Of a stretch of 64,000 bases of DNA, positions 7,761 to 61,480 are shown piece after piece. The notes below the pieces were generated by a model. That model saw only the letters and a list, made by a program, of their open reading frames with translations. It ran no database searches and was not told where the DNA came from. Origin of the DNA: Selaginella moellendorffii (lineage: Eukaryota; Plantae; Lycopodiophyta); the NCBI RefSeq assembly GCF_000143415.4, contig NW_003314263.1, positions 409,114 through 473,113 of the forward strand. Direction: 5' to 3'. Position 1 is the stretch's first letter. Every line of letters starts with the position of its first letter. The position numbers and the translations under genes were made by a program.

Positions 7761-8502
7761 TTTCTAAAAAAGTGATGACAGTCATGAGAGCACCGAGTGT
7801 TTGGTCAACAAAACGAGTGTTTAGTACGCCACCGCTGCAGGAAATAGCGTGACGGTGTCACTCGGAGGCAAAAGATTCAAAGGAAGAAAAAGGCAGTGAG
7901 AACTAGACAAAACAATTGTTGTGCCAGTCGCAAGCAACTGGCCTTCCGGGTATTGTTTGCAGCACTCCTTGACATATTTACAAGAAGAAATGGAAAAGTC
8001 ACATGGTCAAGGATGTTGACTAACAAAGCACCGCATACTGGATCATAAGATACTTGATCATAAGATACTTGATCAAAACCAGGGAAGGCGAGCAAGTAGG
8101 CCAACGAGTCCAGTCCCCGAAAGGGGACGCTCTCATTCCCTAGGGCGCCAACAATCTCTACACAACAGGAGTTTGCAATCCCCCGGATCCCAAGGCAAGA
8201 AGGCGCTCTTGGTCCTACAGGAATAGAAGATTAAAAGTCTTCGCCTGAGAGAAGAAGGCACATGCCTTAACCATTTGGCCAAAGGGACATTGCAATTCTT
8301 TATTTTGAGTTTTGCTTTCATACAAGCTTGTAAGTCCCAGCTTTGTGGTGGCACCACAGGCAAAAAGAAACCTCCGGCTTGTCATTAATTCAGAAATAGA
8401 TAAGCAAATATGGTTCACCAGCGAAAACATGAAAAATTTTATGCTCACTTCAAGAATCATATGCTGCTCTTTTTATTCTTCTTAGGACAGGAAATCTCGG
8501 TT

Positions 8503-9899: not shown

Positions 9900-11452
9900 A
9901 TGGATCTAGCACTTGCTGTCAGCTTTGCAATTTCCATCGCTCTCTGGGGCTTGTGGCTCTTGAAAGCTCGTTCAAATCTTCCACCAAGTCCATGGGGATT
10001 GCCCCTGATTGGCCACTTACACTTGCTAGCGGGAATGCCCCCGCACAAAGCATTGCAACGCATGGCCAACAAGTATGGTCCTATTATTTCCTTGAGGTTG
10101 GGAATGATCCCAACTGTGGTGATCTCCAGCCCGGAGCTTGCCAAGGAGGTGTTCACCACACATGATCTAAATTTTGCTTCCAGGCCGTACATGGTTTTCG
10201 GCGAGTATTTCAGTTATAGCTCTGTTGGACTTGTAAGTAGTCCCCATGGAAAGCTATGGCGAAACACCCGCAAGCTGTGTACAACGGAGCTCTTCACGGC
10301 CCAGCGTATCGACTCTTTCTCTTGGGTCAGAAGGGAGGAGCTCTCGCGTGCCTTGGAGGGGATTTTGAAGGCTCATGGCAATGACAAGCCTGTGGAGGTG
10401 AGAAAAGTGGCCAGTGTTTTTGCCTTCAACATCACATCACGAATTGTGATGAGCAAGAGGTACTTTGGTGACGAAAACGTGGATGCCGATGCCATGGAAT
10501 TCAAGGAGCTCAATGACAATGTTCTTGAGCTGACCATCAATCCCTGTCTTAGCAACTTGGTGCCCTGGTACCTGAGATGGCTGGACTGGCAGATCCCTCG
10601 GTACAAGCGAATCCATGCCAAGCAAGACAAGTTCTTGCAAAAGATCGTTGACGAGCACAAGGAGACAACACGAAAATGCAAGGACTTCCTTGATATCATG
10701 CTTGACTTCTTTGGAGCAGGGACACAAGGGGAGACTTATGTGAAGGCAAACCTCATGGTAACCCGGGCAAAACTTTTCCATATTGCTGCTAACAGGTATT
10801 TCTATGACAAATGCAGGAGATGTTAATTGGTGGAACTGATACCACCAGCACTGCAAGTGAGTGGCTCATGGCTGTATTGATGCACGATCCTCGAGTCATG
10901 GCCAAGCTCCGCGAGGAGCTCGACAGGGTTGTGCGCAACACTCGGATGGTGCAAGAGTCGGACCTCCCAAAGCTCGAATATCTCCAGCTCGTGCTCAAGG
11001 AGACATTGAGACGCTATCCTCCGGGTGCCATAATTATGCCGCACATCTCAAGCCAAGCATCCAACGTTGGCGGCTTTCACGTTCCAAAAGGGACCACTCT
11101 CCTGGTGAATTCATGGGCGATTGGAATGGATCCGGCAGTATGGGAGAATCCCACACAATTCCACCCGGAGCGCTTCTTGGGGAGCTCCATCGACGTCAAA
11201 GGCCAAAACTTTGAGCTCCTCCCGTTTGGATCCGGCCGTAGAAAGTGTCCAGGAATGGCCATGGGATTGCGAGCAGTGGAGCTTCTCGTGGCGAATCTTA
11301 TCCATGGCTTCGATTGGAGCTTTGTGCCCGGGACAACGCCGTCCATGGAAGATGTTTTTCGCAGTGCTATTCAGCTCAAGACCCCATTGCAAGCCATGGC
11401 AAGTCCAAGGTTCCCAAAGGATGTCTACATCAATCAGACATCACATCTTTAG
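9900..11452 (+). CDS. Cytochrome P450, A-type/CYP71 clan; exons 9900-10757 and 10817-11452 (497 aa)
   Basis: Membrane anchor, PPSPWGLPLIGHLHLL hinge, I-helix GGTDT, KETLR (ExxR), PERF and heme motif FGSGRRKCPG. Single 59-bp phase-0 intron just before the I-helix, as expected for A-type P450s. Confidence 0.95.
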
Positions 11453-13529
11453 TCACCATGGACTTCGCTACAAATAATTCTACTCAATGCTGGCTAGACT
11501 TGCGTCTCTCCCACTCCACAATGTGATATATAGATCGGAGAAATCTTGGTTGTCCCAGCAATATATACATTGTCAGATCCAAATTCCAAGGAGAGTGGAG
11601 AACTGCCATTTGAAGGTCTAGTGTAGCCTCGGTCCTGACAAGACGATCTTTCCAACCACGCAAAAGTTTTGATCGTGCATTTCTAGTCACCTTTTATCCC
11701 CTTAGCCCAGCTGCCAAACATTCTATTCATTAACCCAAATAGCGTTCATCAGCCGACTGTAATTCGAGCTTGATCACGTGTTGAAGACCAGGCCATCGAA
11801 TGCGCACTGGTCAAACATAATCACAATTTACGGTCAAGGAGGTCAAAATTTGGTCGTCCTTGAAAAAAAGATAACGGTAAAGAGACAAATATTGGAAAAT
11901 CTACCTCCGAGTGAGAACATTCTATGACTTGAGAGACGTTCTCAGGTGTCCAGTTTGCCTTGAGCTCGTCCCAGGCACGTCTTGCAGTGGCTCCAGGCCT
12001 GCTGATTGTCTCCAGGTCCCTGCTCTCTGCCACAGCCTTGTGGAGCAGCATCCAGCTTCCATTTTGGAGCTTCCAGCAGAGTAAGATGGCGTGGCGTGCT
12101 TGAGATGAGTGAGTGGAATTGAGTATTTGAAATTGATGCTCATACTAACAATTATTTCTATTTAACACTTCTACTAAACTCATTCCAAGATTAATCTAAT
12201 TCTTTTCTCAAATGTAAACAAATTGCTACACTTAGCAAACAATTTGTTTTCCTTGGGATTTTATAGTTTATAAAATTTAGAAGTATTATAATTTTAAAGA
12301 AGGTTCATTTATATCCTACTCTAGTGCTTAATACTTTTTTAAGGGCTAGAAAAAAATGAAATAAGAAAACAATCATTGAACATTTTATGAACCCTTAATT
12401 GCCACTGATGTCATTTATATTATTGGATTAATTGTTGTACCATTAAGCTGAGGCTAGAAACAAAGCTGGCATCATAGATGACCTTCAAGAAGTCAATCCT
12501 GCATAAAAATGTTTTTGTTTTAAGCAGAAATTCAATCATATCACCTCCACAGAGCCATTAAGCTCTATAAACTCTAAATAAAGCCAAAGCTTACAATGTA
12601 CAAGAAGTCTGAGAAAGCAAGAGGAATCACTACCAATTACATCTTCTAGATAGTGAGCAAGTGGAAAAAGTATGAGTTAGTTAAAAGACACTTGATCTAC
12701 ACTTGTGTAAATTTTATCTTATATTTCTCTTCTAAAATCAATTAAAAACTTGTTATGCAATTGTAGCAATAACATGGTTTTCTTATTTATAGTTTTACTA
12801 AAAGAGTCAATATTTTTTTGGAAAATTAATATTTTTCCTTGCTTACCATTGATGAAATTCTATCAAATCAAAGATATAGAGAACTAAATGAATAAAATCA
12901 TATCAAGGATAAACAAGTTTTTCCTTGTGAAACTTACAATACTAAATTTAGAAATTTGGAATTGTGGATGTTTAAGTTTAGATATAAATTTTGTAATAGA
13001 TTTGCCTTTAAATTACTTATTAGATACATATTTATATTAAAAAAAACTTTCTTTTCTTAAAATTTATTAGAAATATAGTTATATTTACCAAAGTTACAAC
13101 TTCAATAGTACAATAAAAAGAAATAAATGTTGAAATTTCCATAAATAGTAGTACTGGTAGAAGACTTTAAAATATGTGATTAATGATTTGGATTAGCATG
13201 TGATAAATATTGATTTTTTGTTGCAACTAAAATGATGTAAATTGCAACATAATTTCAGCCATATGTATTTATTTCTATGCAATTTCTACATTGTTGTTTT
13301 ACATTACAAAATTTTATAATGTAATTTGCATTAAAAAGTTTTGCGTATGATTCCTTATAATTTCATGCCCTCATGAACTAAAGCTGAAAGACACATCTCT
13401 CTCAAGAGCCCTACTCTCTTGACACCCAAATGTGCTTATATCATAATGATTACTACAAAATTTGCATTGACAAATTATGTTACAAACAATCATTTATGTT
13501 TAGTGAGAACATGCTCAAAAGCTTTCAGT

Positions 13530-24000: not shown

Positions 24001-24841
24001 CAAATATTGGTAATATTCAAAGTGTTCTTTAAACGGTAATGCATATTGTTCTTCAGTCAACTGTCTTGGCTCTTGGCTCCGTTTTTGCCAAGCCTCGATA
24101 ATTGAGGAGGTAAATATTATTTCTTTTGTAGAACAAGAGATGTGGTAGCTTCCAGGTTGATCTTCCAGAAGCAAAGAAACATTCTAGTCCAGAAAAAAAA
24201 GTATATCATGACTTTGCCTTCAGCTTTATTTGGCTTGTTTTACCAAAATGGAGCACATAACGCTCCCTCTTGATCTTACAAGTCCTTGCGGCAACGTTTC
24301 TGAAACAAAACAAGTGTTTCATCAACCATGCTCTCAACTGTGAGACAGACGCCGACACGGCTTTGCAATGTACTCTGCAAAAGACTCAGAGGACACCATA
24401 GAAATAGACAAACAAAGTCTTCCACATGGCAACCATAGCACCGGCCTTTCGGTATTGTGTTACAGATCAGGCTGTGCCTATCTACATTGAAAAGGAAATG
24501 TAAGATGGTCTCGGTTGGGGTGGGCTCGCAAAAGCTCATGAACCACATGGAAATCTTGGAAAGACTCTGCATGGTAGAAATGGCTGACAGAAATCTGGTC
24601 TGGGATGGCGTCTGGCATCCACCAAGTCACTCCATTTGTGCCAGCTCGAGTCGGGATGCATTTGCCACCGTCCTTTCATATGGCTTGGTTAATGCAAGCA
24701 GCAAGACTTTACCGTTAGGTTTGGTTAGATGCTTCTGGGCGAATTTCACACTTTGGAATTTTTCGAAACAAGAGCCTTGCCTGATGTCAGATGAAGTTCT
24801 CCTATAAGAGCAGTCGTCTTAATCGGGCAAACACCACACGA

Positions 24842-26385
24842 ATGGATCTAGCACTTGCTGTCAGTTTTGGAATTTTCATCGCTCTCTGGGGCTTGTGGCT
24901 CTTGAAAGCTCATTCAAATCTTCCACCAAGTCCATGGGGATTGCCCCTGATTGGCCACTTACACTTGCAGGAATGCCCCCGCACAAAGCATTGCAACGCA
25001 TGGCCAACAAGTATGGTCCTATTATTTCCTTGAGGTTGGGAATGATCCCAACTGTGGTGATCTCCAGCCCGGAGCTTGCCAAGGAGGTGGTCACCACACA
25101 TGATCTAAATTTTGCTTACAGGCCGTACATGGTTTTCCGCGAGTATTTCAGTTATAGCTCTGTCGGACTTGTAAGTAGTCCCCATGGAAAGCTATGGCGA
25201 AACACCCGCAAGCTGTGTACAACGGAGCTCTTCACGGCCCACGTATCGACTCTTTCTCTTGGGTCAGAAGGGAGGAGCTCTCGCGTGCCTTGGAGGGGAT
25301 TTTGAAGGCTCATGGCAATGACAAGCCTGTGGAGGTGAGAAAAGTGGCCAGTGTTTTCACCTTCAACATCACATCACGAATTGTGATGAGCAAGAGGTAC
25401 TTTGGTGACGAAAACGTGGATGCTGATGCCATGGAATTCAAGGAGCTCAATGACAATGTTCTTGAGCCATCAATCCCTGTCTTAGCAACTTGGTGCCTTG
25501 GTACCTGAGATGGCTGGACTGGCAGATCCCTCGGTACAAGCGAATCCATGCCAAGCAAGACAAGTTCTTGCAAAAGATCGTTGACGAGCACAAGGAGACA
25601 ACACGAAAATGCAAGGACTTCCTTGATATCATGCTTGACTTCTTTGGAGCAGGGACACAAGGGGAGACTTATGTGAAGGCAAACCTCATGGTAACCCGTG
25701 CAAAACTTTTCCATATTGCTGCTAACAGGTATTTCTATGACAAATGCAGGAGATGTTAATTGGTGGAACTTATACCACCAGCACTGCAAGTGAGTGGCTC
25801 ATAGCTGTATTGATGCACGATCCTCGAGTCATGGCCAAGCTCCGCGAGGGGCTCGACAGGGTTGTGGGCAACACTCGGATGGTGCAAGAGTCGGACCTCC
25901 CAAAGCTCGAATATCTCCAGCTCGTGCTCAAGGAGACATTGAGACGCTATCCTCCGGGTGCCATAATTATGCCGCACATCTCAAGCCAAGCATCCAACGT
26001 TGGCGGCTTTCACGTTCCAAAAGGGACCACTCTCCTGGTGAATTCATGGGCGATTGGAATGGATCCGGCAGTATGGGAGAATCCCACACAATTCCACCCG
26101 GAGCGCTTCTTGGGGAGCTCCATCGACGTCAAAGGCCAAAACTTTGAGCTCCTCCCGTTTGGATCCGGCCGTAGAAAGTGTCCAGGAATGGCCATGGGAT
26201 TGCGAGCAGTGGAGCTTTTCGTGGCGAATCTTATCCATGGATTCGACTGGAGCTTTGTGCCCGGGACAATGCCGTCCATGGAAGATGTTTTTCGCAGTGC
26301 TATTCAGCTCAAGACCCCATTGCAAGCCATGGCAAGTCCAAGGTTCCCAAAGGATGTCTACATCAATCAGACATCACATCTTTAG
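24842..26385 (+). pseudogene. Cytochrome P450 copy 2, frameshifted
   Basis: Near-identical to 9900-11452 but with 4-bp (~24968), 1-bp (~25241) and 4-bp (~25468) deletions. First frame stops at 25033. I-helix GGTDT changed to GGTYT. Same intron at 25691-25749. Confidence 0.9.
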
Positions 26386-28790
26386 TCACCATGGACTTCA
26401 CTACAAATAAATTCTACTCAATGCTGGCTAGACTTGCGTCTCTCCCACTCCACAATGTGATATATAGATCGGAGAAATCTTGGTTGTCCCAGCAATATAT
26501 ACATTGTCAGATCCAAATTCCAAGGAGAGTGGAGAACCGCCATTTGAAGGTCTAGTGTAGCCTCGGTCCTGACAAGACGATCTTTCCAACCACGCAAAAG
26601 TTTTGATCGTGCATTTCTAGTCACGTTGTATCCCCTTTGCCCAGCCGAGCTTGATCACGTGTTGAAGACCAGGCCACTGGTCAAACATAATCACAATTTA
26701 CGGTCAAGGATGGTCAAAATTTGGTCGTCCTTGAAAAAAAGCAAATATTGGAAAGTCTACCTCCGACTGAGAACATTCTAGGACTTGAGAGACGTTCTCA
26801 GGTGTCCAGTTTGCCTTGAGTTCGTCCCAGGCACGTCTTGCAGTGGCTCCAGGGCTGCTGATTGTCTCCAGGTCCCTGCTCTCTGCCACAGCCTTGTGGA
26901 GCAGCATCCAGCTTCCATTTTGGAGCTTCCAGCAGAGTAAGATGGTGTGGCGTGCTTGAGATGAAAAAATATCAATGCTAATATTTGCTCACTTAAGAAA
27001 TAATTAGAGTCCCCTAATGTGTTTTCTTATTTCATTTGTTAGCTCTTAAAAACGTATTAAGCACTGATACAAATTAACCTTTTTAAAAATTATAATATTT
27101 TAAAATTTTATCAACTATAAAATCCCAAAGAAAACCAATTGTTTGCTAAGTGTAGCAATTTTTTTTCATTTGAGAAAAGAATTAGATTAATCTTGGAATG
27201 AGTTTAGTAGAATTGTTAAATGAAATAATTGTTAGTATGAGCATCAATTTCTTCTCTTTCTATTGTAAATAAGTTCTTAAACAGTTGCTGCCCAAATTCC
27301 AACAATAAATCTTACCAAGAGTTATTATGTGATATGGCTAGCAAAAACAAATGGTTCTAAATATGTATATTTATCTAAAGTTTATTGGAATGACTTGGTC
27401 ATTTCTATCCTACAAAAATCCTTTATGCATGCTTATATAAAAGGCTAGGTTATAGAAAATGGACTAAATCTTGATAATTTGTTGGCATATTTATCTACTA
27501 CAAAATTGATACAACTTCCTAGTCACAAGCTCACCAGTTTTAAGATTCTTAGTTAGTTTTGTTGTAGATCAAATTTCAACATCATTTAAAGTTAAATCTA
27601 CGGTCAAGTGTTTTGTTTAGATTGGTAGAAAATTATATGGTAAAAAGATTACTATAGGAACTCTATGCACTCTAGCATTTTGTTTTTGGGGATGATAGCA
27701 ATATAGTGATCTTTCATAACACTGTGATCAATTCATATGGTTTTGTCCAATAGAAATTTTACACATAGTCTATTGTAGTATAGATTATCCAAAAATCAAA
27801 ATATATACCACATACTTGACTAGTTGAAGAAGAGATGAATTTGACGAATTTAGAGTTTTAAAATTTGGTTAAAATAGGTTTTAGATTTGAAGAGAACACT
27901 TTACAACCACAACCATAGGCTCAATCTCAACATTATTCTCAAGAAGTTTTAAAAACAAGAAATAACAAATGTCTAAAGATTACAAATACTTTATCAAAGG
28001 AAGCAAAAATAGCGTACTCAAAAGTATTATAGTTGAAGGTAGAAATTAAGAGTGTTAACATCAAGTAGCAATATTATCATCACGAATATACAATTCTTAG
28101 TTATGAAATTGATATTATAAATAGGAAGGTTTATAACATTACAATCAACTAATTCTCAAGTTGTATTTGCCTATACTTCTTTTAATATCAAATTTATGAT
28201 AAGTCTTTTATCCCTTGCAAGCATATGTATTTTGTATATTAAATGCTTCTTGGGATTGATCCAAATATTAACTTTGGATTCATCACTTTGTAATATCTGA
28301 ATATGAGATGTTCATGACATTGAAAAAGAATTAGATATTGGTATTATATTTGAATATAATATAAGATAAATATCTTTTTATTTAAAAGTTACATCTAAAA
28401 TAACATATGGCATTTCTTATAATAGAGATTTTATGTAATAATAATAAATTTATTATAAATATACATTATATATTAGTGGATGCTTACTTAAAATAATTAT
28501 TATAAATAATAAATATTAAACATTAAAATAATAATTTTTTCTGTAAATAAGTTGATAATGCAAAGCCTCTATTAAATAGCAACTACTGCTACTAAGTTTA
28601 GCTGCTGGTAGTTTACACAAATCTAAATATTATTAAAATTACTACCTATTTAATAAAAATATTGCCACAAAATCTTAACAAAATACTTTGATGTGCCAAA
28701 ATATTCTTAAAATATTCTTGTCAACGGCAATAGCTCCCTTGACTCGCTCCCTAGATCCTCATTTATCTGGGAAGACCTGCAAGCACGAGT

Positions 28791-29333
28791 ATGGCTAAAC
28801 TCATCCAGATCCTTGTAGTGGTAGTTTTCTTTGCAGCAAGTTCTTGCGCGGCAACGGATTCTAGCAGTCACTTTGCAAAGTGCACTGAAGTTATTAGCTT
28901 CTACCTCCATGATCTCTTCTTCCCAACGCCTGGGGTGAATGTCACCACGGCAATTGTTCTTCCAGGCACGAACAACGCCACCATGTTTGGAATGGTGGCC
29001 ATCATCGATGACAAGCTGACAGAAGGCCCCTCGATCGACTCCAAGCTCGTGGGAAGAGCCAAAGGAATATTAGCATTCGATTCTATCAGCAACATCAGCC
29101 TCCTGGCAAGCATCACCCTGGAGCTCGAGGGGCGAGATGGAAACATCAATCTACTGGGCCAGAACCGCGCTCTGGATCCGCAGAGGGAGATTTCAATCGT
29201 GGGAGGAAGTGGAGAATTTAGATTTGTTCAAGGATTTGCAACACTGAGAACGCATTCTCGCGAGCCTTACGGCACCAAGGTCTTTTGGCAGGTGTATGTG
29301 ATCAAACTGTGGGACTGCGTGTTCAACTCCTAG
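28791..29333 (+). CDS. Dirigent protein, copy 2 (180 aa, intact ORF)
   Basis: Highly similar inverted paralog of 8503-9051, with an FYLHD motif. Confidence 0.9.
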   Translation: MAKLIQILVVVVFFAASSCAATDSSSHFAKCTEVISFYLHDLFFPTPGVNVTTAIVLPGTNNATMFGMVAIIDDKLTEGPSIDSKLVGRAKGILAFDSISNISLLASITLELEGRDGNINLLGQNRALDPQREISIVGGSGEFRFVQGFATLRTHSREPYGTKVFWQVYVIKLWDCVFNS

Positions 29334-30299
29334 GTGTAGAACCGAGATTTCCTGTCCTAAGAAGAATAAGTGAGCATAAATTTTTTCATGTTTTCGCTGG
29401 TGAACCATATTTGTTTATCTCCTGTTTATCTTGCACTTTGTGCCTTGATATGGAATTTGGCAAGCCGGTCTTTTTGCCTAAAGTTGGACAAGGAGCTTGC
29501 ATGAAAGCAAAACTCAAAATAAAGAATTGCATTGATCTTCCATAGCAATGTCCCTTTGGCCAAGGCGTGTGCCTTCTAGGTACATGAGGTCTCTCAGGCG
29601 AAAACTTTTAATCTTCTATTCCTGTGAATCTCTAGGACCAAGAGCGCCTTCTTGCCTTTGGATCCCGGGGATTGCAAACTCCGCGTAGAGATTGTTGGCG
29701 CCCTAGGGAATGAGAGCGTCCCCTTTCGGGGACTGGGCGCCTTCCCTGGTTTTGAACAAAATCTAAAAGAATAACATCCATCTTGCTTTGTTGGCTTATG
29801 TGCTAGATGTCATGTAGTCTTTCTTGCGTTTCGCCCCTCTCAGACGTGAATGTAGGGCGTTGACCTAGCCCGCACGACTTGACCATGTGACTTTTCCATT
29901 GGTTGCTTGTTCTTCGTCAAGGGGTGCTGCCCGCGCTGCAAACAATACCCGGAAGGCCGGTTGCTTGCGACTGGCACAACACTTGTTTTGTCTAGTTCTC
30001 ACTGTCTTTTTCTTCCTCTGAATCTTTCTCCTGCTTTGCCTCCAAATGCCATTTCCTGCAGCGGTGGCGTACTAAACACTCGTTTTGTTGACCAAACACT
30101 AGTGATGGGCCTTAAGGTTCCACGGCAGAGTTCATTGGTACTAATCTGTTTTAATTACTGGGAATGACTACTGTTTGACAAGGAAAAGGAGGCTTGCGAT
30201 TATACTAACGGCCACATGAAAGCTTGTTCAAATTCAAAGTGTCATAAAAACAAGTAATATTTATTCTTCTACAAAAGGAATTCTCCAGGGAAGAAAGTA

Positions 30300-30570
30300 T
30301 GTGGGAAGAGCCAAGGGAATGCTAGTGTTTGATTCTATCAGCAACATTAGCCTCCTGGTGAGCATGACCCTGGAGTTCGAGGGCAAGATGAAAACATCAA
30401 TCTGCTAGGCCAGAACCACGCTCTCGATCCGGATTTCAATCGTGGGAGGAAGTGGAGAGTTTAGATTTTCTGGAGGGTTTGCAACGCTGAGACTGCATTC
30501 TCTCGAGCCTTACGGCACGAAGGTCTTCTACCAGTTGTATGTGACCGGAGTGCTTGTACAAATCCTAGGT
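30300..30570 (+). pseudogene. Dirigent relic 3 (C-terminal half, deletions)
   Basis: VGRAKGMLVFDSISNISLLVSMTLE...SIVGGSGEFRFSGGFATLRLHSLEPYGTKVFYQLYV, with frameshifts. Confidence 0.8.
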
Positions 30571-31119
30571 GTAGAATCGAGATCTCCTCTCATGAGACAA
30601 ATTAAAAAAGCACCACATAATACCATAACAGTTTCAAGATTGCCACAAGTTACTCCTTGATGTGGAGCAAGTATTGTTGCAGCTCCACGTTGATGATCAA
30701 TCAGCAGTAACTTGCTCCACGATTGATCAAGGAACCACTAGATGTTGCGCAAAACATACAACAATAAATTATGCTCAACTCTCCATGTCCCTAGTCCCCT
30801 ATAAAGAGGAGATAAATGCTCACATGAATCTAATTGGGCACAACGGTACTAATAGTCTTCATGTAGGTTCCCTCTTGCCTATAGTATATGTTATATCATT
30901 GTATAGTCGGTTTCATGCATTTATTCTCCCAGCTAAGCATGAGGCTAGAGGGTTGACAAGTAAGTTGTCTGGATGAGCAAAGTTGTAATGAATTTTGCTG
31001 TTTCAATGACTTAGAATGAGTCGATATACACACAAAGTCTTACCTCAGATGGTTTGTCTTCATCATCATTGCTTTAAGAATTGTCCCAGGAGACATAAGC
31101 TTTTATAATTGCATACACA

Positions 31120-31425: not shown

Positions 31426-31656
31426 ACTTCTAGAGGAATAAAGGCGTATGATCCACAGAAGTTTGTTTCCATAACATGTCCAAGATTGCTACTAACGTTA
31501 GATCAAGGAAGTTTTAGATTTAATGCTTATTTACTCATGAGAGTCAGAGATGTGCATTGTAACTTTTATTCACGAACAAAACAGTACTACGTACATATTT
31601 TTCCCCATTAATGTCGCTTGGCAATGTATTTGATACATTAAGAATGCATCACAAGT

Positions 31657-32532
31657 TTATAAACACTTGAGGAACTTTGTCCAGCCAATGTGAATCCCTT
31701 GGACCAAGAGCGCCTCCAGTTCCACCGGATGCTCGCCACTCTTGTTCTTCCCTTGTTGCATCACTTGGAAGCACTTAAGGTACACACTCTTGTCCACAAA
31801 CCTTGGAGGATCCCAGGGATTGAAAACGTCATCGCCGCCAAGGGGCGCATAGAGATTGTTGGCGGCCCAGGGAACGATGGAGGCAAGCAAGTAGGCCACC
31901 AAAAGCCTACCCACGCGTCCATTCCCATCCCTGAACGGGTGGACACTCTCAAACCTGTAAAAAAAGGCGGCGCTGATGCTCACCACCTTTGCAACCCTGA
32001 GCTTGGGATCTGCTGCAAATGCCTCCTTGAGGGATTTGTTGGTAGATGACACTAGCTGCTCGAGAGCCGCCGGGATCTTCTTAGGATCCATGTAGACATG
32101 CTTGCGTTTCTCTGTGGTCAATGTCCAGGCCTCGCCCCTCCGGAACTCCCCCGCGTCGACCTCGTCCTTGGTATTCTCCCCAAGCATCTTATGGATCTGG
32201 AGAATCTTTTCGAAATCTAGGCGTGGAACTTTCTCGGCCTTAGCCAGAGCGTTGACCCAGCACAGGCATTTGTAAAGGTTGAGCGTTGACGTGAGCTTTG
32301 GTTTTTTGTCACCGCCAAAGCCGTCAAGCGCAAAGGACTTTGTCTGGTCGTACTGGTTAATGGCATCACTGACCTCTTGCAGTGTATCGAGCCCTTCGCC
32401 CTCGATGTGTGCCACTTGGAACACAAACTCTTTCACCATTGCTCTGCCTTGCTTGAGTGCGCCACTCTTCTTCTTCTCAGGCAGTGATTCATACCTTGAC
32501 ACGCACTTCTCAATGCTCTTGATCATCGCCAT
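31657..32532 (-). CDS. Fic/Fido-domain protein (class II-like AMP-transferase), 291 aa, intronless
   Basis: Canonical catalytic motif HPFRDGNGRVGR, upstream ILQIHKML...AGEFR element, and N-terminal inhibitory-helix-like FQVAHIEG. TATATAAA on the minus strand at ~32646-32653. Confidence 0.9.
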   Translation of the reverse strand: MAMIKSIEKCVSRYESLPEKKKSGALKQGRAMVKEFVFQVAHIEGEGLDTLQEVSDAINQYDQTKSFALDGFGGDKKPKLTSTLNLYKCLCWVNALAKAEKVPRLDFEKILQIHKMLGENTKDEVDAGEFRRGEAWTLTTEKRKHVYMDPKKIPAALEQLVSSTNKSLKEAFAADPKLRVAKVVSISAAFFYRFESVHPFRDGNGRVGRLLVAYLLASIVPWAANNLYAPLGGDDVFNPWDPPRFVDKSVYLKCFQVMQQGKNKSGEHPVELEALLVQGIHIGWTKFLKCL

Positions 32533-32888
32533 TGTAAAAAAGGATGTCCTAGAGCCCTAGTTTCGAACCCGCGATTTACTGACCAACCAACGGTAGCGGT
32601 TGGACGGTAGTGACTGGACGGCGGCGATCAAAGCACATTAAGGAGTTTATATACCTTTTTGGATTGCAATGCTTTCTATACCAAAAAAGAACTTACAGAT
32701 TAAAAAAACCTTTTGATCGCATAAAAACTTTAAGCAGTGAAAGAATCTGTTTGGAAAGATCGTTCTTCCTCTAGAGTCCTGTGGACTCACTTTTCTTACC
32801 GTGTGTTCTTCGTGCCAAGGAACATCCACTTACGCCTTGGAAGATCGAGCCAAAATAACTTCGCCGCGTGATCTTTGTCTCTCGACTG

Positions 32889-35157
32889 TCACGAAGTTCC
32901 CGACGTCCCGGACGATTCACCAGTGTTGTAATCCACCGGCTTGATCACACCCCCGGAGCCTTCAATGTATTGAATCCTCTTGCCATGGTTGACCTGATCG
33001 GAGGACGATTGAAACGCCCTGCTTATTCTCCTCAACCAGATATCATAGTCCGCCGGGTATGGAGTCCCGATCAAGCTATCGATGTAGTCCGCATAGGCCT
33101 TGAGCACCGTCGAGATCTCCCCGAGCAAGAGCTGGAAAGTTCTCAAAGCCCAAGCCCGCTCTCTCCACTGGAGCGCGGCCTCCAAGCTCTCAAACTCCGG
33201 CATACTCCCACCGACGAGGAAGTAGAGCAGATAGACGAGGCTCTCGGCGTCGGCGGCCGGGCACAGCTTCCCCTCCTGCAGCGCGTAAGTCGACGAGTAG
33301 CGAGGAGATATCGCGGGACTGTCCCGGTCTTCCAGCACTGCCCGGCCCCAGTCGATGAGAACGTAGAAGTAGTCTCCATCACCTTTCACCCGGATCACTC
33401 GCTGAGGGCTGATATCCCCGTGCTGGATCCCCGCGGACCCAGCGCTGCGCAGCGCCGAGAGCAAATCGTGGCAGCACCTGAGAGTTTCCACCGCCGAGAG
33501 CCAGCCGTGCTTGGCCACCACTATGTCCAGCGGCTCCCCAACTGGAGACGTGACCAGCACCGAGATCCCACACCACGGATGATCGCAACGGCCGCCAGGA
33601 CTCTGTTTGGAGCAGGAGCCCGAGTGGAGGATTCGGCCGGACGATACGAGCTGCGGCAAGTACCTGCTGGAGACTCCCCTCTGGCTCATGGTGTTGAGAA
33701 TTCTGGTCTGCCGCTGGACTTGATACCACGTCGTCATGTCCTCCCACGACGGCTCCAGCTGAGAGGGATGCGCTCCAACGTACACGGACAGTAGCTTGTC
33801 ACCTTCGTCCAGGGAGGTTGCGCTGTACATCGAGTACTTCTCGTCTCCTAGGCTGCTTACTATCCGAAAGCCACAGCCGCGTTGCCATTGAGCATCCTCC
33901 AGCCACAGCGTCGACCCCGGCTCCAGCTTCAGTGCTTCAAACTCGCGTATAATCTCCTGTGCTTCGATCTCCTCGATCTCCTGTATCTCATGGCTCGTAA
34001 CTTCTTGCCGGTAAGAATGGTCTATTCCATTCTCCTGGATTTCCAGAAACCGCCGCTCGATCTTCCGCCTGTGCAGCCGCGACCCGTGGTCGCTCGCCAA
34101 CTCGGCCAGCGATCTCTTCGGCGACCCTCTACATTGCTCGATACAATGTAAAGTCGCCAGAATGAGCTGCAAGGCCCCCAAGTCCCCCCAGTTAGCGTTG
34201 CCAAACCTGTTCCATACCTGCTCGACCGAAGAGACCGCTACGTCTGCATGCTGCTCGAGCCAGTCCGTCGCAACCTCATAAGTTAATCCTGCCTTGGTAT
34301 CCAGCTTCGAGATATCCCCACGTAGTCTCATCACCCCACCGCACTTGGAATCCACGAACAAGACGTAGGCCGTGTCCGTGTGCTTTCTCACCGACGGCTT
34401 CTTCTCGGAGTAGAGCCTCGACATGAGCATATGAATCCCATGGAAGAGCGAGCGACCAACGATGGAGCTCACGGCAAACCCAGCGTCTCCTCCAATCTCT
34501 GGCTGGACCTCCACGAATTCCACTATGTGCTCCCACACTGTGTTCATCCCCCTGCCACTTTTCCCAACCAGAGCCACACCGTCCAAGTAGCTCCTCTTCC
34601 CCCGAGGCCCTGTGACGAAGAATGGCATCCGGTCCTCCGAGCTCCACAGCGTCTCCCATAGCGTCTGAGCTATGGTGTGGAGGAAATCCTCCACCGCGAG
34701 GTTTATCTCCGCGGCGATGTTCCCCGAGAGGCCATGCTGCCAGTACGGCATTCGTAGGAGCTGCTGGAAGATCACTCCTTCCAGCGCATAGTCCAGCTGC
34801 TTGAGCTCGTCAAGCTGGAAAGGCTCTTTGAACTGATCTTCCGGATTCCCGAGCTTACCTAACAGCCATTCTTGCGCGTGGGAGGTGAACTCGTCGCAAT
34901 CCACGAAGCGTTTAGCAAAATCTTTGAGCCCAGAGTACTTCACTGTGGAGGCCACGCAATCGCTTAGAGAAAAAAATCGAAGAAATCGAAGAGCTTCTAG
35001 CGCTCACTCACCCGAGGACGCGATTTTTCCGTAACTCCCCTCGCTGTGGCCAGACGATGGAGCATTGATTCTCGCCCTCCGCGCTGCACAGACAAAGCAC
35101 AGCCATGAATATTTCGGGAAATCCCAGCGCACAGAGAGATAATCTACCAGATTTCAT
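32889..35157 (-). CDS. Conserved plant kinase-like protein (large exon 32889-~34960 plus probable small 5' exons ~35012-35083 and 35148-35157)
   Basis: 688-codon ORF with C-terminal kinase fold (IQHGDISP, LIDWG). ATGAAATCTG|GT start exon. Exact 5' splicing uncertain. Confidence 0.8.
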
Positions 35158-44045: not shown

Positions 44046-45005
44046 AGATCCATCTTTGTAAAGAGCTGGAGAGCTTTGCTCCTTGATCGATTTGGTTTAT
44101 ATGGCTTGGTAGATCGATTTTCTTGCAACTGGCTTCAAAGGAAGGTTCCAGCCATCATACATGCTTAATAAACAATGGCACTAGTTTGTTCAGTGGCATT
44201 CAAGGCAATACTTGCACCATATTTATAAGAAAATGAGGTTGAGGAGTGAATGTTCATGTTTCTTGTCTGTAAACCAAACTTCCCAGTCTTTGGATATGGA
44301 TATCATCTCCTTAGGTGTGTGGCCCAAGTAAGCCATTATTTTTACTGTACAAGAGACTTGGCAGTTAAGAGATTAGGAATGAGTTAATTAGAAGATGGAA
44401 AATTTAGTCACTTACAATTTATGAGTCAAAAAGCCAGTGATTTAGGGCTTTGGTTAAATCCACCATAGGCTCCAATTTTAGGATGTTGGCAGTCTTGCTA
44501 TAGACCAGATCTCCTTCACTTGAGGAACATACATCAATAAACTCTTTGGTTGCTGTTTGAGCCTTGATTTTAAAAATTTATATCATGGGGAGATATGTGA
44601 TATCCCTCATTTGCTCTGGCAACTTTCATTGCCTCTAGAGCCTCCATCTCCACAACTGCACGGATCAATACCACCTTCACTCAGGAACTGCTCAATGCTC
44701 ACAGATTGAGGAGTGATTAAGAGAATTCGGTCATGCAAGGAGAGAAGCCAAAGAGCTCTACGACCAAGTTCAACACAATCTTTGTCAATTGAGTCTAGCA
44801 CAGGTGCAATCTAGAGCTGCTCGCACTGCATCCTTTTGTTTAGGATTATGCCAACTCATTATTATAAATTTATAGACTGTTCTAGTGTATTATTTTCAAT
44901 TATTTTTAAGTTTCTAAAATATATAATAAATTATGATTTTTATTATTGTACTATAACAATAATTTAAAGTTTAATATGACTATATAGGATATTAATGTAA
45001 TTTCT

Positions 45006-50198: not shown

Positions 50199-53100
50199 TC
50201 TAAGCAACTAAATTTTTCATTCTACTTTAATCACTTAACCACACCTCTGACCACTTGGAGGAGTCTCACTCACAACCTCCATAAGTCTTATTCTAGATTT
50301 AGTGACCTGCTAGCCCCAAAAATGGCATCCATGCTACTCAACCATTGCACTTGGTCCAAGTGCTCCACGTGTTCAATCCCATAACCGACACCCCAAGGTA
50401 CCACCGACATATCAGCCCATTACGCTAAGGCCATGCCCATTCACCTTGGTCACACTGGTGGTCTAACACCACTTACATCACAGTCTCATCTCTCAAAGAC
50501 TAGACCATCCATCCATAAGTGATCATCCTAGATCCACTCCTTAGCATCCTTAGGATGCCCGTAGACATGGGGAATAACATTCCCCAATATCACTTTTTCA
50601 GTCCCCACCAAGTACCTTTCTATCCATGGCCGTATTTGCTAACACTGTGTAAGCGATTAAATTTTCCATTCTACTTTAGTCAATTAACCACACCTCTGAC
50701 CACTTGGAGGAGTCTCATTCACAACCTCCTTAAGTCCAATTCAGGACTTGGGACCTGCTAGTCCCGAGAATGGCATCCATGCCACTCATCCCTTGCACTT
50801 GGTCCAAGTGCTCCACATGTCCAGTCCCAAGACCGACAACCAAAGGTACCACTGACATATCGGCCCGTTACGCTAAGGCCATGCCCATTCACCTTTGCTG
50901 CACTAGTGGACCAATACCACTTGCATCACAATCCCGTCTCTCCAAGACTGGGCCGTCCGTCCACGAGTGGTCATCCCAGATCCACTCCTTAGCATCCTTA
51001 GGATGTCCACAGACATGGGGAATAACCTTCCCCAACATCCCTTTGTTAGTTCTTGCCAAGTCCCCTTTCCGTCCATGGCCATATCACCAACACTGCCACT
51101 AGATCAAGGCCCGCAGGCCCGGCCACTAAGTCCCATTGTCCTCTGGGACTTCCTCACCATGTGACCGTATCCATAGTCACTACACTAGAGGATTGCTCCT
51201 CCTCCTTTCCCCCATTTGGGACTTCGGGACAATATTTCGGAACACCGTGGCCCTACGCAAGCCCCGTGGGTACTCTCCCCACCTTCCGCCTTTAGGTGCT
51301 CTAGCCATGGGCTTAGAGTGAGGTTTCGTTGAGCCACACAAGGTATCCAAGTAGGTAGTGCCACCCACACTTGGACTGGGAGCATCGGCCAATCGATCTC
51401 CTGGGGGAACTAGAGCTGGCTCTTGAACACTTCACTAAGCTACCCTGCTTGTCGGTCCGTGTTCACTCTAGTCTTGGACTTCCCAGTGGGCAGCTCATCA
51501 CCCAACACTGGGTCCGGCCTTCCTGGGCCAAACTAGCCTTTCCTGGCCAAACTGGCTCCACTGCAGTCCTCCCCCTTACTATACTTTTGGAGCTCAACAA
51601 ACCCCCCAGGGTCTGGGAGATGAACGCTTTGGGCTTTCACTCTCTCAGACTCGAACTCGGACTCGGCCTCGGCCTCGGTCTCGGTCTTGGTCCTGGTCTC
51701 GGTCTCGGTCTCGGTCCCGGGCTCGGTCTTGGTCCCGGTCTTGACTTCAGACTCCATCTCGGACTCCATCTCGGGTCCGTCTCGGGTCCACCTCGGACTC
51801 CATCTCGGACTCCACCTCGGACTCCATCTTGGACTCCATCTCGGGTCCATCTCGGACTCCATCTCGGACTCCATCTTAGGTCCATCTCGGACTCCATCTC
51901 GGACTCCATCTCGGGTCCATCTCGGACTCCATCTCAGACTCCATCTTGGGTCCATCTCGGACTCCATCTCGGGTCCATCTCGGACTCTATCTCGGGTCCA
52001 TCTCGGACTCCATCTCGGACTCCATCTCGGGTCCGTCTCGGACTCAATCTCGGATCCATCTCGGGTCCACCTCGGACTCCACATCGGACTCCACCTCGGA
52101 CTCCACCTCGGACTCCATCTCGGGGTCCTTCTCGGACACTTCCACGTGTCATGTGTTGGTCCTTTTGGGTCCCTTTTTGGAGCCTTGTTTATTGCTCACT
52201 TTGTGCTCATTCCTCGAGCACTTCGTTGGGAGTTCCACTCCCACTCTCGACCTTTTCAAGTCAGAGCTTTTAGTCCAAATGTGTTACGCTCGTTTAGCTT
52301 TCGCTTCGGCCACTACCACGTGGCACCCTTCCGGCTCCACTTTGGGGCCTAGGGATTTTGTGTCTCACACACTGCCACTGGATCAAAGCCCACAAGTCCG
52401 ACCACTAAGTCCCACGGTCCTTTAGGACTTCCTCACCACATGACTGTAGCCTTGGTCACTACATCAGAGGACTTCTCCTCTTCCTTTCCAAAGTCTAGGA
52501 CTTTGGGACAACGATTCGGAACATTGTAGCCCTATGTGAGCCTTATGGGTACTCTCCCCGCCTTCCTCCTTTGGGTGCTCTAGCCATGGGCTTAGAGCGA
52601 GGTTCCATTAAGCCATGCCAGGTATCCAAGTAGGTAGTGCCACCCACACTTGGACTGGGAGCATCGGCCAATCGATCTCCTGGGGGAACTAGAGCTGGCT
52701 CTTGAACACTTCACTAAGCTACCCTGCTTGTCGGTCCGTGTTCACTCTAGTCTTGGACTTCCCAGTGGGCAGCTCATCACCCAACACTGGGTCCGGCCTT
52801 CCTGGGCCAAACTAGCCTTTCCTGGCCAAACTGGCTCCACTGCAGTCCTCCCCCTTACTATACTTTTGGAGCTCAACAAACCCCCCAGGGTCTGGGAGAT
52901 GAACGCTTTGGGCTTTCACTCTCTCAGACTCGAACTCGGACTCGGCCTCGGCCTCGGTCTCGGTCTTGGTCCTGGTCTCGGTCTCGGTCTCGGTCCCGGG
53001 CTCGGTCTTGGTCCCGGTCTTGACTTCAGACTCCATCTCGGACTCCATCTCGGGTCCGTCTCGGGTCCACCTCGGACTCCATCTCGGACTCCACCTCGGA

Positions 53101-60164: not shown

Positions 60165-60575
60165 TTACAAACACTTGATGAACTTTGTCTAGCCAATGTG
60201 AATAACTTGGACAAAGAGCGCCACTGGATGCTTGCCATCCCTTGTTTCATCACTTGGAAGCACTTAAGGTACATCCTCTTGTCCTGGAGGATCCTGGGCA
60301 TTGCAAACCTCATCGCCCCCAAGGGGCGCATAGAGATTGTTGCTGCCCCAGGGAACGATGGAGGCAAGCAAGTAGGCCACCAAAAAGCCTGCCCACACGT
60401 CCATTCCCATCCCTGAACGGGTGGATGCTCTCAAACCTGTAAAAGAAGGCAGCACTAATGCTTGCCACCTTTGCAACCCTGAGCTTGGGATCTGTTGTAA
60501 ATGCCTCCTCGAGGGATTTGTTGGTAGATGACACTAGCTGCTCCAGAGTCGCCAGGACCTTCTTAGGATCCATGT
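60165..60575 (-). pseudogene. 5'-truncated, frameshifted second Fic copy
   Basis: MDPKKV...FYRFESIHPFRDGNGRVGRL followed by a +1 frameshift (AAAAA vs AAAA) and deletions. Shares its 3' flank (~60008-60160) with 31430-31560. Confidence 0.88.
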
Positions 60576-61480
60576 GGTGTTCCAGATCCATCTTGCTTGG
60601 AGACCTTTGCTCCTTTGCTTAATAAACAATGCCACTGGTTTGTTCAGTGGAGCAAATCCCATTCAAGGCAATACTTGCACCATATTTATAAGCGGTGGGA
60701 ATGGGGTCGTCATCCTAAGCCTCAGGGTGCGATAATTTGAGGAGCGAATGTTCATGTTTCTTGTCTGTAAACCACACTTCCAAGTCTGGATATGAATATC
60801 ATCTCCTTAACTAGATGTATGGCCTAAGTAAGCCACTACTTTCACCATACAAGAGACCTGGCGGTTAAGAGATTAAGAATGAGATCATGGTGTATCCAGG
60901 GTTTGTATGAGAAACAAACATACATCAGTGAACCCTTTTGTTGCTGCTTGAGTATATCGTGGGGAGAATACACCTATATGATGTATACACCTTCATTGCC
61001 TCCGGGGGCTCCATCTCCATGTCAATCTGCTGCACGGCTCAATACTACCGAGCAGGAATTGCTCACTGCACACAGATTTAGAGCTCGCCAAGAATGGATT
61101 GACAAGAAGTATCCCTGAAGAGTTGGAACTTCTGTGCTTCAAAGCTTGTATGATTCTTTGTTTTTATGTTTTGATTTAATATTGTTTCACATATTTCAGT
61201 TTCATAGATGGTCTCTAGCGTCTTGCCGAAGAGATAGCATTCAGTCATGCAAGGAGAGAAGCCAAGAAGCTCCACCACCAGGTTCTCTCCAACACAGTCT
61301 TACCAGCCCAGTGAGGGTGGGTCCCGTTTGCTTGTATAAATTTAAAGATTGTTCTATTCAATTATTATAAGTATCTAAAAGTACAAAATAAAATATACTT
61401 TTTATTATTTTATTATAACAGAATTATCTTGATTGTAATGCTTAATATGACCACATAGAAGATTAAATACAGTTTCTATA
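60576..61480. repeat. Dispersed repeat, direct copy of ~44038-45008
   Basis: Colinear matches, e.g. GTTCCAGATCCATCTT, ATTCAAGGCAATACTTGCACCATATTTATAAG, GTCATGCAAGGAGAGAAGCCAA. Confidence 0.75.

What the first reader, a model, noticed from the sequence alone, without database searches (positions are those of the whole stretch)
31657..32532. Intact, intronless Fic (AMPylase-type) gene embedded in a land-plant genome
Seen: the full HPFxDGNGRxxR motif (HPFRDGNGRVGR) and an N-terminal helix FQVAHIEG equivalent to the (S/T)xxxE(G/N) inhibitory motif, with the Glu kept and S/T replaced by Val. There is no evident signal, TM or TPR region. A TATA box lies ~115 bp upstream, and the flanks are clearly plant genes, so contamination is unlikely. 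Known: Fic enzymes are mainly bacterial toxins/effectors (e.g. Xanthomonas AvrAC uridylylates plant kinases) plus metazoan FICD/HYPE, where this Glu enables de-AMPylation. Model angiosperms have no recognised Fic protein. Inference: a horizontally acquired and domesticated AMPylation/de-AMPylation enzyme, i.e. an undescribed post-translational system in a plant, possibly in defence. It sits between the DIR array and a kinase-like gene.
Basis: partly seen in the sequence, partly recalled or inferred. Interest (0 to 1): 0.85.

Follow-up and report, generated by a model that had tools for sequence, protein, structure and literature searches.

The report
Unannotated Fic enzyme gene in Selaginella
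The spikemoss Selaginella carries an intact but unannotated gene for a Fic-type protein-modifying enzyme that belongs to a small, little-studied gene family shared with ferns, even though reviews say plants lack such enzymes.

Summary
Window 31657-32532 (-) is an intact, single-exon 291-aa ORF with a Pfam Fic domain (69 bits, cutoff 24), the full catalytic motif (H198-R209) and an N-terminal inhibitory-helix motif with its Glu (E44). It has no TM or TPR region. A confident model (pLDDT 82) is most like human FICD (TM about 0.7). The window is Selaginella moellendorffii, with ordinary plant genes on both sides.

The gene is not a lone foreign insert. It belongs to a family with at least 6 distinct loci in S. 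moellendorffii, some already named fic-1 or Fido-domain in RefSeq/UniProt, plus two genes in the fern Adiantum nelumboides and a fern-like transcript. The plant sequences form one clade (75% NJ bootstrap) among eukaryote-type Fic genes. No prokaryotic or viral donor is close: 25-37% identity, mostly in the core only. A decayed half-copy lies 28 kb away; dN/dS against it is 0.48.

This copy has no gene model and no transcript-derived protein on record, so expression is unproven. It is most likely a functional, auto-inhibited cytosolic AMP-transferase/de-AMPylase of a lycophyte-fern family. It is a new member of a known kind. A defence role is unsupported.

The parts
31657..32532 (-). Intact single-exon Fic gene, 291 codons plus stop
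32398..32421 (-). N-terminal inhibitory-helix motif FQVAHIEG (aa 38-45; Glu = E44; Val40 where Ser/Thr is usual)
   Evidence: Aligned to the inhibitory motifs of BT_2513 and C. elegans FIC-1. Column shares.
31885..32220 (-). Fic core domain (Pfam PF02661, aa 105-216), including the conserved G128/R131 stretch before the flap
31906..31941 (-). Catalytic motif HPFRDGNGRVGR (aa 198-209; catalytic His = H198)
   Evidence: All motif positions are invariant in the 11 plant-clade members.
31666..31791 (-). C-terminal two-helix block (aa 248-289) conserved in the full-length family (P269, G279, W284) and largely absent from the prokaryotic core-only relatives
32646..32653 (-). TATA-like octamer TATATAAA, 114-121 nt upstream of the ATG
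   Evidence: 6 matches in the window against about 2 expected. A consensus match only.
31565..31570 (-). AATAAA polyadenylation-signal-like hexamer, about 90 nt after the stop
   Evidence: A consensus match only.
60165..60576 (-). Decayed partial paralogue (relic) of the Fic gene: 3' half only, broken reading frame
   Evidence: 85% nt identity to gene nt 440-876, 28 gap columns, reading spread over three frames, 2 in-register stops, 5' half absent. dS 0.165, dN/dS 0.48.
32889..34955 (-). Upstream neighbour on the same strand: 688-aa ORF with only a weak protein-kinase C-lobe likeness. Not part of the Fic system as far as tested.

Best explanation
The ORF is a previously unannotated, probably functional member of a Fic (Fido) gene family that seed-free vascular plants carry. 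Lycophytes and ferns have it, and it was most likely already present, and already duplicated, early in vascular-plant history.

Shown:
- It has a canonical Fic fold with a complete catalytic loop.
- An N-terminal helix carries the inhibitory Glu, as in class II Fic enzymes such as FICD.
- It is a stand-alone soluble protein without a membrane anchor or TPR.
- It has a family-specific C-terminal two-helix block.

Inferred from established Fic enzymology (PMC8097203):
- In the resting state E44 pairs with the second Arg of the catalytic motif (R209) and holds ATP in a non-productive pose, so the enzyme is a weak AMP-transferase.
- It may instead remove AMP from modified targets.
- Release of the helix would switch it to AMPylating Ser/Thr/Tyr of cytosolic or nuclear targets that are not yet known.

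Paralogues that have Asn in place of the Glu (the fic-1 pair) or lack the helix motif (the P0020 group) would be the constitutively active arm of the same system.
For: - Domain, motifs and fold.
- Family membership: the exhaustive HMMER search gives full-length hits at 33-39% identity to Adiantum nelumboides and S. moellendorffii proteins. At least 6 distinct Selaginella loci sit among ordinary plant genes. The plant clade has 75% bootstrap support.
- Expression of a relative: a member 65% identical to the Adiantum gene P0017 occurs on about 1.3-kb transcript-like contigs, with UTR-like flanks, in three sequencing runs.
- Constraint: all 11 plant members keep every catalytic-motif residue despite 26-35% overall identity. 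The neighbouring copy of the same age (dS 0.165) has lost its 5' half and its frame, while this copy is intact. dN/dS between them is 0.48, and the synonymous excess has p = 0.04.
- Native composition: GC3 0.66 against 0.47-0.73 for neighbours.
- Missing gene model: annotation of this family in the assembly is unreliable. The models at L170 and L171 omit a Fic motif that is present in the DNA. That explains why this gene has no model.
Against: - No gene model in either public annotation, and no protein at least 50% identical anywhere in a 15-billion-protein collection that includes transcript assemblies. So there is no expression evidence for this copy.
- Differences from the relic are not significantly enriched at third codon positions (13/8/16, p = 0.25), and the dN/dS test is weak (36 differences).
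- The Ser/Thr of the inhibitory motif is Val here and in all plant members that have the helix, so regulation may differ from FICD.
- Activity, nucleotide preference and targets are wholly inferred.
- The window-Adiantum pairing has only 58% bootstrap support, and deep nodes are unresolved.
- Absence from seed plants and bryophytes rests on named hits only.
Confidence: 0.65

Rival explanations
1. One reading: a bacterial Fic toxin or effector gene was transferred horizontally into the Selaginella lineage and domesticated, giving a lineage-specific novelty.
For: - Patchy distribution. Among named hits only a lycophyte and a fern appear, and reviews report none in plants.
- The gene is intronless.
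- Kinch et al. 2009 infer extensive horizontal transfer of Fic genes in general.
Against: - The best prokaryotic matches among 185,579 species genomes are 25-37% identical, mostly confined to aa 95-220, and spread over unrelated phyla.
- None has the full-length architecture.
- The gene has diverged paralogues at 26-35% identity and fern relatives, so any transfer would be ancient and not specific to Selaginella.
- The nearest non-plant relatives lie in eukaryote-type DNA.
- Composition matches the neighbours.
- Bacterial promoter and terminator scans are at background level.
Confidence: 0.1
2. The ORF is intact by recency only. It would be a silent or dying duplicate that is not expressed and is no longer under selection.
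For: - No gene model and no matching protein in any collection searched.
- A sister copy in the same window has already decayed.
- The codon-position pattern against the relic is not significant.
- The N-terminal P.WR extension seen in many relatives is missing.
Against: - All 291 codons are open and every catalytic and helix residue is kept, although this lineage is only 33-39% identical to its nearest relatives.
- dN/dS is 0.48, even though the relic lineage should be neutral.
- TATA-like and poly(A)-like signals are in the right places.
- Other clearly intact family genes are also mis-modelled in this assembly.
Confidence: 0.17
3. The family reached plants through giant viruses (Nucleocytoviricota), and this locus is part of, or descends from, an endogenised viral insertion.
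For: - One giant-virus MAG contig (L048/L049) encodes a 315-aa protein with the full-length family architecture, scoring 108 bits over HMM positions 3-297. It lies beside a D5-type primase, a 2-cysteine adaptor/kinase-like ORF and an HMG-box ORF.
- In the NJ tree it falls inside the broad eukaryote-type clade (67% support).
- From my own knowledge, not tested here: giant-virus-like insertions have been reported in S. moellendorffii.
Against: - The viral protein is only 17-21% identical to the plant members and does not group with them.
- The window has no viral hallmark gene near the Fic ORF. Its neighbours are dirigent, a kinase-like ORF and PPR.
- The 688-aa neighbour is not related to the viral kinase-like ORF.
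- The other Selaginella loci sit among ordinary plant genes.
Confidence: 0.06

Closest known systems
FICD/HYPE (human) and FIC-1 (C. elegans), the metazoan ER AMPylase/de-AMPylase of BiP
   Same: - Best structural matches: TM 0.65-0.71 over 288-295 columns.
- Same catalytic motif.
- The N-terminal inhibitory helix with its Glu aligns position for position.
- C-terminal helices are covered by the structural alignment.
   Different: - Only 17-19% identity.
- No transmembrane anchor and no TPR domain, so it is not ER-lumenal and not expected to act on BiP.
- Val replaces the Ser/Thr of the inhibitory motif.
- It is multi-copy in the genome, whereas reviews describe a single gene per metazoan genome.
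Bacterial class II stand-alone Fic proteins: BT_2513 of Bacteroides thetaiotaomicron (3cuc), SoFic of Shewanella (3eqx/3zcn), C. difficile Fic (4x2e)
   Same: - Best sequence hits in the PDB, E 1e-7 to 1e-4.
- Similar size: BT_2513 is also 291 aa.
- The inhibitory motif lies N-terminal of the core on the same chain.
- Stand-alone soluble architecture.
   Different: - 14-18% identity in structural alignment.
- NCBIfam SoFic equivalog scores 35.5 bits against a cutoff of 550.
- SoFic has a C-terminal winged-helix domain that is absent here.
- The plant family's own C-terminal block is not shared by the prokaryotic core-only relatives I hold.
Annotated S. moellendorffii paralogues (RefSeq 'adenosine monophosphate-protein transferase fic-1' XP_024542721.1; UniProt Fido domain-containing proteins D8SRP9, D8SRP7, D8SF41) and Adiantum nelumboides MCO5567833.1 and MCO5614706.1
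   Same: Same family and same full-length architecture, 26-39% identity, intronless or nearly so, and one clade in the tree.
   Different: - The window gene has no gene model.
- It keeps the inhibitory Glu. The fic-1 pair has Asn there, and the P0020 group lacks the helix motif.
- It lacks the N-terminal P.WR extension.
XopAC/AvrAC of Xanthomonas (uridylylating type III effector) and other secreted Fic effectors (VopS, AnkX)
   Same: They share the Fic core and catalytic motif, with weak NCBIfam hits.
   Different: - Scores are far below the cutoffs: 23.5 against 450, 18.3 against 364, 19.7 against 1400.
- By my own knowledge, those effectors lack an intramolecular inhibitory helix.
- There is no secretion signal or LRR/ankyrin module here.

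Membership tests
Fic/Fido superfamily (Pfam PF02661) | Profile score above Pfam's gathering cutoff | tested here: met
   69 bits against 24, E 6.7e-19
Fic/Fido superfamily (Pfam PF02661) | Catalytic motif HPFx(D/E)GN(G/K)R, as given in PMC2686095 | tested here: met
   HPFRDGNGR at aa 198-206, followed by VGR
Fic/Fido superfamily (Pfam PF02661) | All-helical Fic fold with a beta-hairpin flap | tested here: met
   Model pLDDT 81.8, pTM 0.85. Two short strands at aa 136-146 precede the core helices. Top 45 PDB matches are all Fic proteins. This rests on a predicted structure, not a solved one.
Fic/Fido superfamily (Pfam PF02661) | Nucleotide-monophosphate (or related) transfer activity | not testable with these tools
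   No biochemical data. Inferred from the intact motif only.
Class II (intramolecular, N-terminal inhibitory helix) Fic proteins | Inhibitory motif (S/T)xxxE(G/N) on a helix N-terminal of the core (PMC8097203) | tested here: inconclusive
   The helix is present (aa 19-43 in the model), and Glu44-Gly45 align with the motif of FIC-1 and BT_2513. The first position is Val, not Ser/Thr, here and in all 6 plant members that have the helix.
Class II (intramolecular, N-terminal inhibitory helix) Fic proteins | Salt bridge between the inhibitory Glu and the second Arg of the catalytic motif | not testable with these tools
   Model coordinates cannot be read out here. Both residues (E44, R209) are present.
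FICD/HYPE orthologue group (metazoan) | N-terminal transmembrane anchor and TPR repeats before the Fic domain (PMC2686095, PMC12409994) | tested here: not met
   No TPR in Pfam. Maximum hydropathy is 1.39. The protein is only 291 aa.
FICD/HYPE orthologue group (metazoan) | Close sequence kinship | tested here: not met
   E 6e-5 to 2e-3 and 17-19% identity. The named relatives closest to the query are plant proteins, not FICD.
XopAC/AvrAC type III effector family (NCBIfam NF041381) | Score above NCBIfam's cutoff | tested here: not met
   23.5 bits against 450
SoFic protein adenylyltransferase equivalog (NCBIfam NF046030) | Score above NCBIfam's cutoff | tested here: not met
   35.5 bits against 550
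Lycophyte-fern Fic clade (defined here) | Full-length match (helix + core + C-terminal block) to the family profile, and grouping with the Selaginella and Adiantum genes | tested here: met
   334 bits over HMM positions 22-297 (the query is one of the 10 sequences in that profile, so the score is partly circular). Independent support: phmmer 147 and 127 bits to P0014 and P0015. Plant clade at 75% bootstrap.

The most novel reading that the evidence does not exclude
Seed-free vascular plants keep a diversified cytosolic Fic system that seed plants lost. It would combine auto-inhibited members able to act in both directions, like this one, with members that have lost the inhibitory Glu. If so, reversible AMPylation (or another nucleotide-based modification) is a working signalling or stress system in a plant lineage, contrary to the textbook statement that Fic enzymes are absent from plants. 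The wider full-length family would then be a second eukaryotic Fic lineage, separate from FICD, that also occurs in giant viruses.
Probability: 0.3. Interest if true: 0.7.

Novelty: new member of a known kind. Interest (0 to 1): 0.5.

Why it matters
Current AMPylation reviews say eukaryotes have a single Fic protein, present in metazoans and absent from plants and fungi (PMC12409994). This locus, together with its paralogues and fern relatives, shows that at least two lineages of vascular plants carry several catalytically intact Fic genes of a non-FICD type. Most are mis-modelled or, like this one, not modelled at all.

The practical result is a corrected annotation and a defined gene family in which to ask what Fic enzymes do in a plant cytosol. 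It also shows that the family is shared among eukaryotes rather than freshly taken from bacteria. That moves the evolutionary question from recent gene transfer to an old family with loss in seed plants.

Tried and rejected
- Word-index protein searches were of little use. The single-sequence search found only 7 weak prokaryote-like hits. The 10-sequence profile recovered one unnamed subgroup. The plant-only profile was swamped by the ubiquitous catalytic-motif words and returned only P0020. The exhaustive HMMER search found the family.
- Exact look-ups of the ORF found nothing.
- The last cluster look-up gave no names for the unnamed full-length members, and their run and assembly accessions appear in no paper in the library. 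The organisms behind P0021, P0022, P0024, P0034, P0045 and P0057 therefore remain unnamed. I call them eukaryotic only from context: sparse short ORF calls, sorting nexin, ZBED, reverse-transcriptase fragment, ORC4.
- Literature searches pairing Fic, Fido or AMPylation with Selaginella, ferns or lycophytes gave nothing relevant.
- An upstream exon carrying the family's P.WR motif was not found.
- A tRNA-like string upstream of the ATG is not a tRNA.
- The transposon-capture idea has no support. No repeat pair flanks the gene, and the only self-match is the relic.
- Functional linkage with the kinase-like neighbour is rejected.
- Bacterial promoter and terminator scans are at background level.
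- The codon-position test against the relic was underpowered.
- I could not read model coordinates, so the E44-R209 contact is untested.
- No spliced model was needed, because the gene is a single exon.
Nothing else was changed.

Full report
**1. Observation.** The window has an ATG-to-TAA ORF of 291 codons at 31657-32532 on the minus strand. It is one of only 27 ORFs of 150 aa or more in 64 kb.
- Pfam assigns a Fic domain to aa 105-216 at 69 bits, against a gathering cutoff of 24, and finds no other domain.
- The catalytic motif HPFRDGNGRVGR is aa 198-209.
- The string FQVAHIEG is aa 38-45. HMMER aligns it onto the inhibitory motifs of Bacteroides BT_2513 and C. elegans FIC-1. E44 and G45 match, and V40 sits where those proteins have Ser/Thr.
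- Maximum hydropathy is 1.39 and the N-terminus is hydrophilic, so there is no anchor or signal peptide.
- A TATATAAA octamer lies 114-121 nt upstream on the coding strand. It is one of 6 in the window, against about 2 expected. An AATAAA lies about 90 nt past the stop.
- The frame closes 8 codons above the ATG, and no upstream exon was found.

**2. Where the window comes from.**
- Flanking ORFs are dirigent proteins, cytochrome P450s, a 762-aa PPR protein and an Nse4 fragment.
- One dirigent ORF is an exact match to a protein of Selaginella moellendorffii on a 4.46-Mb scaffold.
- GC3 of the Fic ORF is 0.66, within the 0.47-0.73 range of its neighbours.

This is native lycophyte DNA, not contamination.

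**3. Fold.** An AlphaFold2 model built on a 10-sequence family alignment has mean pLDDT 81.8 and pTM 0.85.
- Its best PDB matches are human FICD (TM 0.65-0.71 over about 290 columns), BT_2513 and C. elegans FIC-1. All 45 matches with E of 0.001 or less are Fic proteins.
- Identity is only 14-19%.
- In the viral structure library, the only good matches are Fic-fold proteins of two large arthropod DNA viruses and of phages, at 18-20% identity. I noted these by name only and fetched nothing.

**4. Relatives.** The word-index search found almost nothing. The exhaustive HMMER search of 1.84 billion representatives found 961 hits, of which only 13 had E of 1e-10 or less. The named ones among the best are all from two plants:
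- Two proteins of the fern Adiantum nelumboides. P0014 is also 291 aa, scores 147 bits, and is 36-39% identical depending on the alignment.
- Several S. moellendorffii proteins. They include a pair that RefSeq names 'adenosine monophosphate-protein transferase fic-1' and several that UniProt calls 'Fido domain-containing protein'.

Further look-ups placed two more hits, P0119 and P0026, on other S. moellendorffii scaffolds among ordinary plant genes: pectinesterase, Arf GTPase, LRR receptor kinase, mitochondrial carrier.

In all, family genes lie on 8 scaffolds of assembly GCA_000143415.2. Three pairs share a 90%-identity cluster and are probably the two haplotypes that this assembly is known to contain (my own knowledge). 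That leaves at least 6 distinct loci, one of them a tandem pair.

The annotated models at L170 and L171 have no Pfam Fic hit. The DNA there nevertheless encodes an intact catalytic motif within a single continuous full-length match. Models for this family are therefore unreliable, which fits the window's gene having no model at all.

The fern gene P0014 is intronless: 876 bp for 291 aa.

P0016 is 65% identical to the other Adiantum gene. It sits on about 1.3-kb contigs with UTR-like flanks in three separate sequencing runs. This is the only transcript-type evidence for the family.

**5. The wider family.** A profile of the family recognises 55 sequences among those I hold that have the full architecture: inhibitory helix, core and C-terminal block.
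- The unnamed members lie on megabase contigs with sparse short ORF calls. Their neighbours include a PXA-RGS-PX sorting nexin, a ZBED domain, a reverse-transcriptase fragment and ORC4, which indicates eukaryotic DNA. They often occur as tandem pairs.
- Scans of IMG/VR and of one genome per prokaryotic species returned only matches of 25-37% identity, mostly limited to aa 95-220 and scattered over many phyla.
- The single exception in architecture is a 315-aa ORF on a giant-virus MAG contig, flanked by a D5-type primase, a 2-cysteine-adaptor/kinase-like ORF and an HMG-box ORF. It is 17-21% identical to the plant proteins.

**6. Tree.** I built a neighbour-joining tree from 74 sequences and 263 columns, with 100 bootstraps.
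- The 11 plant sequences group together at 75%.
- The window gene pairs with Adiantum P0014 at 58%.
- P0016 pairs with P0017 at 100%.
- The sister of the plant clade is unresolved (26%), but at least one of its members (P0057) is eukaryotic.

NJ on such divergent proteins is a rough guide only. It argues for one plant clade with old internal splits, and against a recent Selaginella-specific acquisition.

**7. Motif states.**
- All 11 plant members keep every catalytic-motif position, plus G128, R131, P269 and G279.
- The inhibitory Glu is kept in 4 members: the window gene, both Adiantum genes and P0016.
- It is Asn in the fic-1 pair, and the helix motif is missing or altered in the five members of the P0020 group.
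- The Ser/Thr position is Val in all six plant members that have the helix. In the non-plant full-length members it is Ser/Thr in 30 of 51, and the Glu is kept in 47 of 51.

**8. The second copy.** tblastn of the ORF against its own window found a second Fic-like stretch 28 kb away, with outer bounds 60165-60576 on the minus strand.
- It covers only the 3' half of the gene (nt 440-876) at 85% nucleotide identity, with 28 gap columns.
- It is read in three frames, has 2 in-register stops, and has no detectable 5' half.
- A repeat shared with 44.2 kb abuts it.

I left it as it stands and report counts only.

Over 133 comparable codons there are 13 synonymous and 23 nonsynonymous differences. This gives dS 0.165, dN 0.079 and dN/dS 0.48, and the synonymous excess has p = 0.04. 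The plain codon-position count is not significant (p = 0.25).

The relic should have drifted neutrally for at least part of that time. A ratio below 1, together with the contrast between a decayed copy and an intact copy of the same age, points to constraint on the intact gene. The evidence is weak.

**9. The neighbour.** The 688-aa ORF just upstream on the same strand has no Pfam family.
- It has only marginal matches to the C-lobe of protein kinases.
- It is not found at the other Fic loci.
- It is not related to the kinase-like ORF beside the giant-virus Fic.

There is no sign of a functional pair or of a viral insertion. No viral hallmark ORFs lie nearby.

**10. Mechanism.**
- Shown: a complete Fic active-site loop, a class II-type N-terminal helix carrying Glu, a soluble stand-alone architecture and a family-specific C-terminal block.
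- Inferred from the enzymology summarised in PMC8097203: the Glu pairs with the second motif Arg and holds ATP unproductively. The wild-type enzyme would then be a poor AMP-transferase and may act as a de-AMPylase. Displacement of the helix would activate transfer.
- Targets cannot be BiP in the ER lumen, as they are for FICD, because no anchor or signal is present.
- Nucleotide preference, targets and any role in defence are unknown.

**11. [quoted passage not shown] Kinch et al. 2009 found eukaryotic Fic only in metazoa and a few fungi. No paper in the searchable library links Fic, Fido or AMPylation with Selaginella or ferns in this sense. The family is visible in databases through automatic names but appears unstudied.

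**12. Verdict.** The gene is a new, unannotated member of a known enzyme family, within a plant subfamily that is annotated but undescribed. Recent bacterial transfer is unlikely. An old eukaryote-type family retained in lycophytes and ferns is the better reading. Expression and activity of this copy remain open.

- Nothing from memory was sent to a tool, and the report relies only on the alignments and the motif quoted in PMC8097203.
- Searches printed tool-generated match bounds and ORF pieces for the broken second copy.
- The names of two animal-virus proteins appeared, and nothing was fetched.

Noticed in passing
window 60165-60576 (-): Decayed half-copy of the Fic gene: 3' half only, 85% nt identity, reading spread over three frames, 2 in-register stops, 28 gap columns. 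It still shows the catalytic motif string. It is closer to the intact gene than any database protein.
   Followed up: yes
L170:4881-5873 and L171:5016-5906 (S. moellendorffii scaffolds GL377589.1 and GL377605.1): The annotated gene models (P0119, P0026, and likewise P0018, P0165 and P0019) lack the Fic motif. The DNA nevertheless encodes it within one continuous full-length match, so the models probably splice out the catalytic core by mistake.
   Followed up: partly
L001:6001-6966 and 7702-8835; proteins P0015/P0164 and the P0020 group: This is a tandem pair of Fic genes in S. moellendorffii. The fic-1 pair has Asn where the inhibitory Glu should be, and the P0020 group lacks the inhibitory-helix motif altogether, while both keep the full catalytic motif.
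   Followed up: partly
L048/L049:4578-5525 (giant-virus MAG contig in IMG/VR): A 315-aa Fic ORF with the same full-length architecture as the eukaryote-type family lies next to a D5-type primase, a 2-cysteine-adaptor/kinase-like ORF and an HMG-box ORF.
   Followed up: partly
L002-L004, L168, L169, L172 (ENA metagenome assemblies): Unnamed eukaryote-type contigs up to 1.3 Mb carry full-length family members, often as adjacent pairs (L002: 4734-5678 and 6001-6894; L168: 5876-7015 and 10001-11134). The organisms could not be identified.
   Followed up: partly
window 8110-12108 and 24097-29736: A segmental duplication of a dirigent + cytochrome P450 unit, with 86% identity over the dirigent part (inverted) and 94% over 2.4 kb of the P450 part. 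A further dirigent fragment lies at 30301-30621.
   Followed up: no
window 9900-11452 (+): The P450 reading is split into two overlapping ORFs (308 and 213 aa) that cover Pfam p450 positions 1-266 and 269-449. This is either a short intron or a frame change. The duplicate at 25744-26385 shows only the second part as a long ORF.
   Followed up: no
window 51090-54393: Two tandem copies of a 1279-bp unit at 94% identity, G+C-rich (0.52-0.55), each with a 183-aa minus-strand ORF that has no Pfam family. There are internal sub-repeats of about 140 bp.
   Followed up: no
window 54001-56000: A very A+T-rich block (GC 0.26) holding a 499-aa ORF of GC 0.19 with no Pfam family. It is probably low-complexity sequence rather than a gene.
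   Followed up: no
window 32889-34955 (-): A 688-aa ORF (GC3 0.73, GTG as first listed start, so the true start may lie elsewhere) with no Pfam family. It has only a marginal likeness to the C-lobe of protein kinases around aa 473-595.
   Followed up: partly
window 44162-44383 and 60616-60883: A dispersed repeat at 74% identity, one copy of which abuts the 5' edge of the Fic relic. It may mark the event that removed the relic's 5' half.
   Followed up: no
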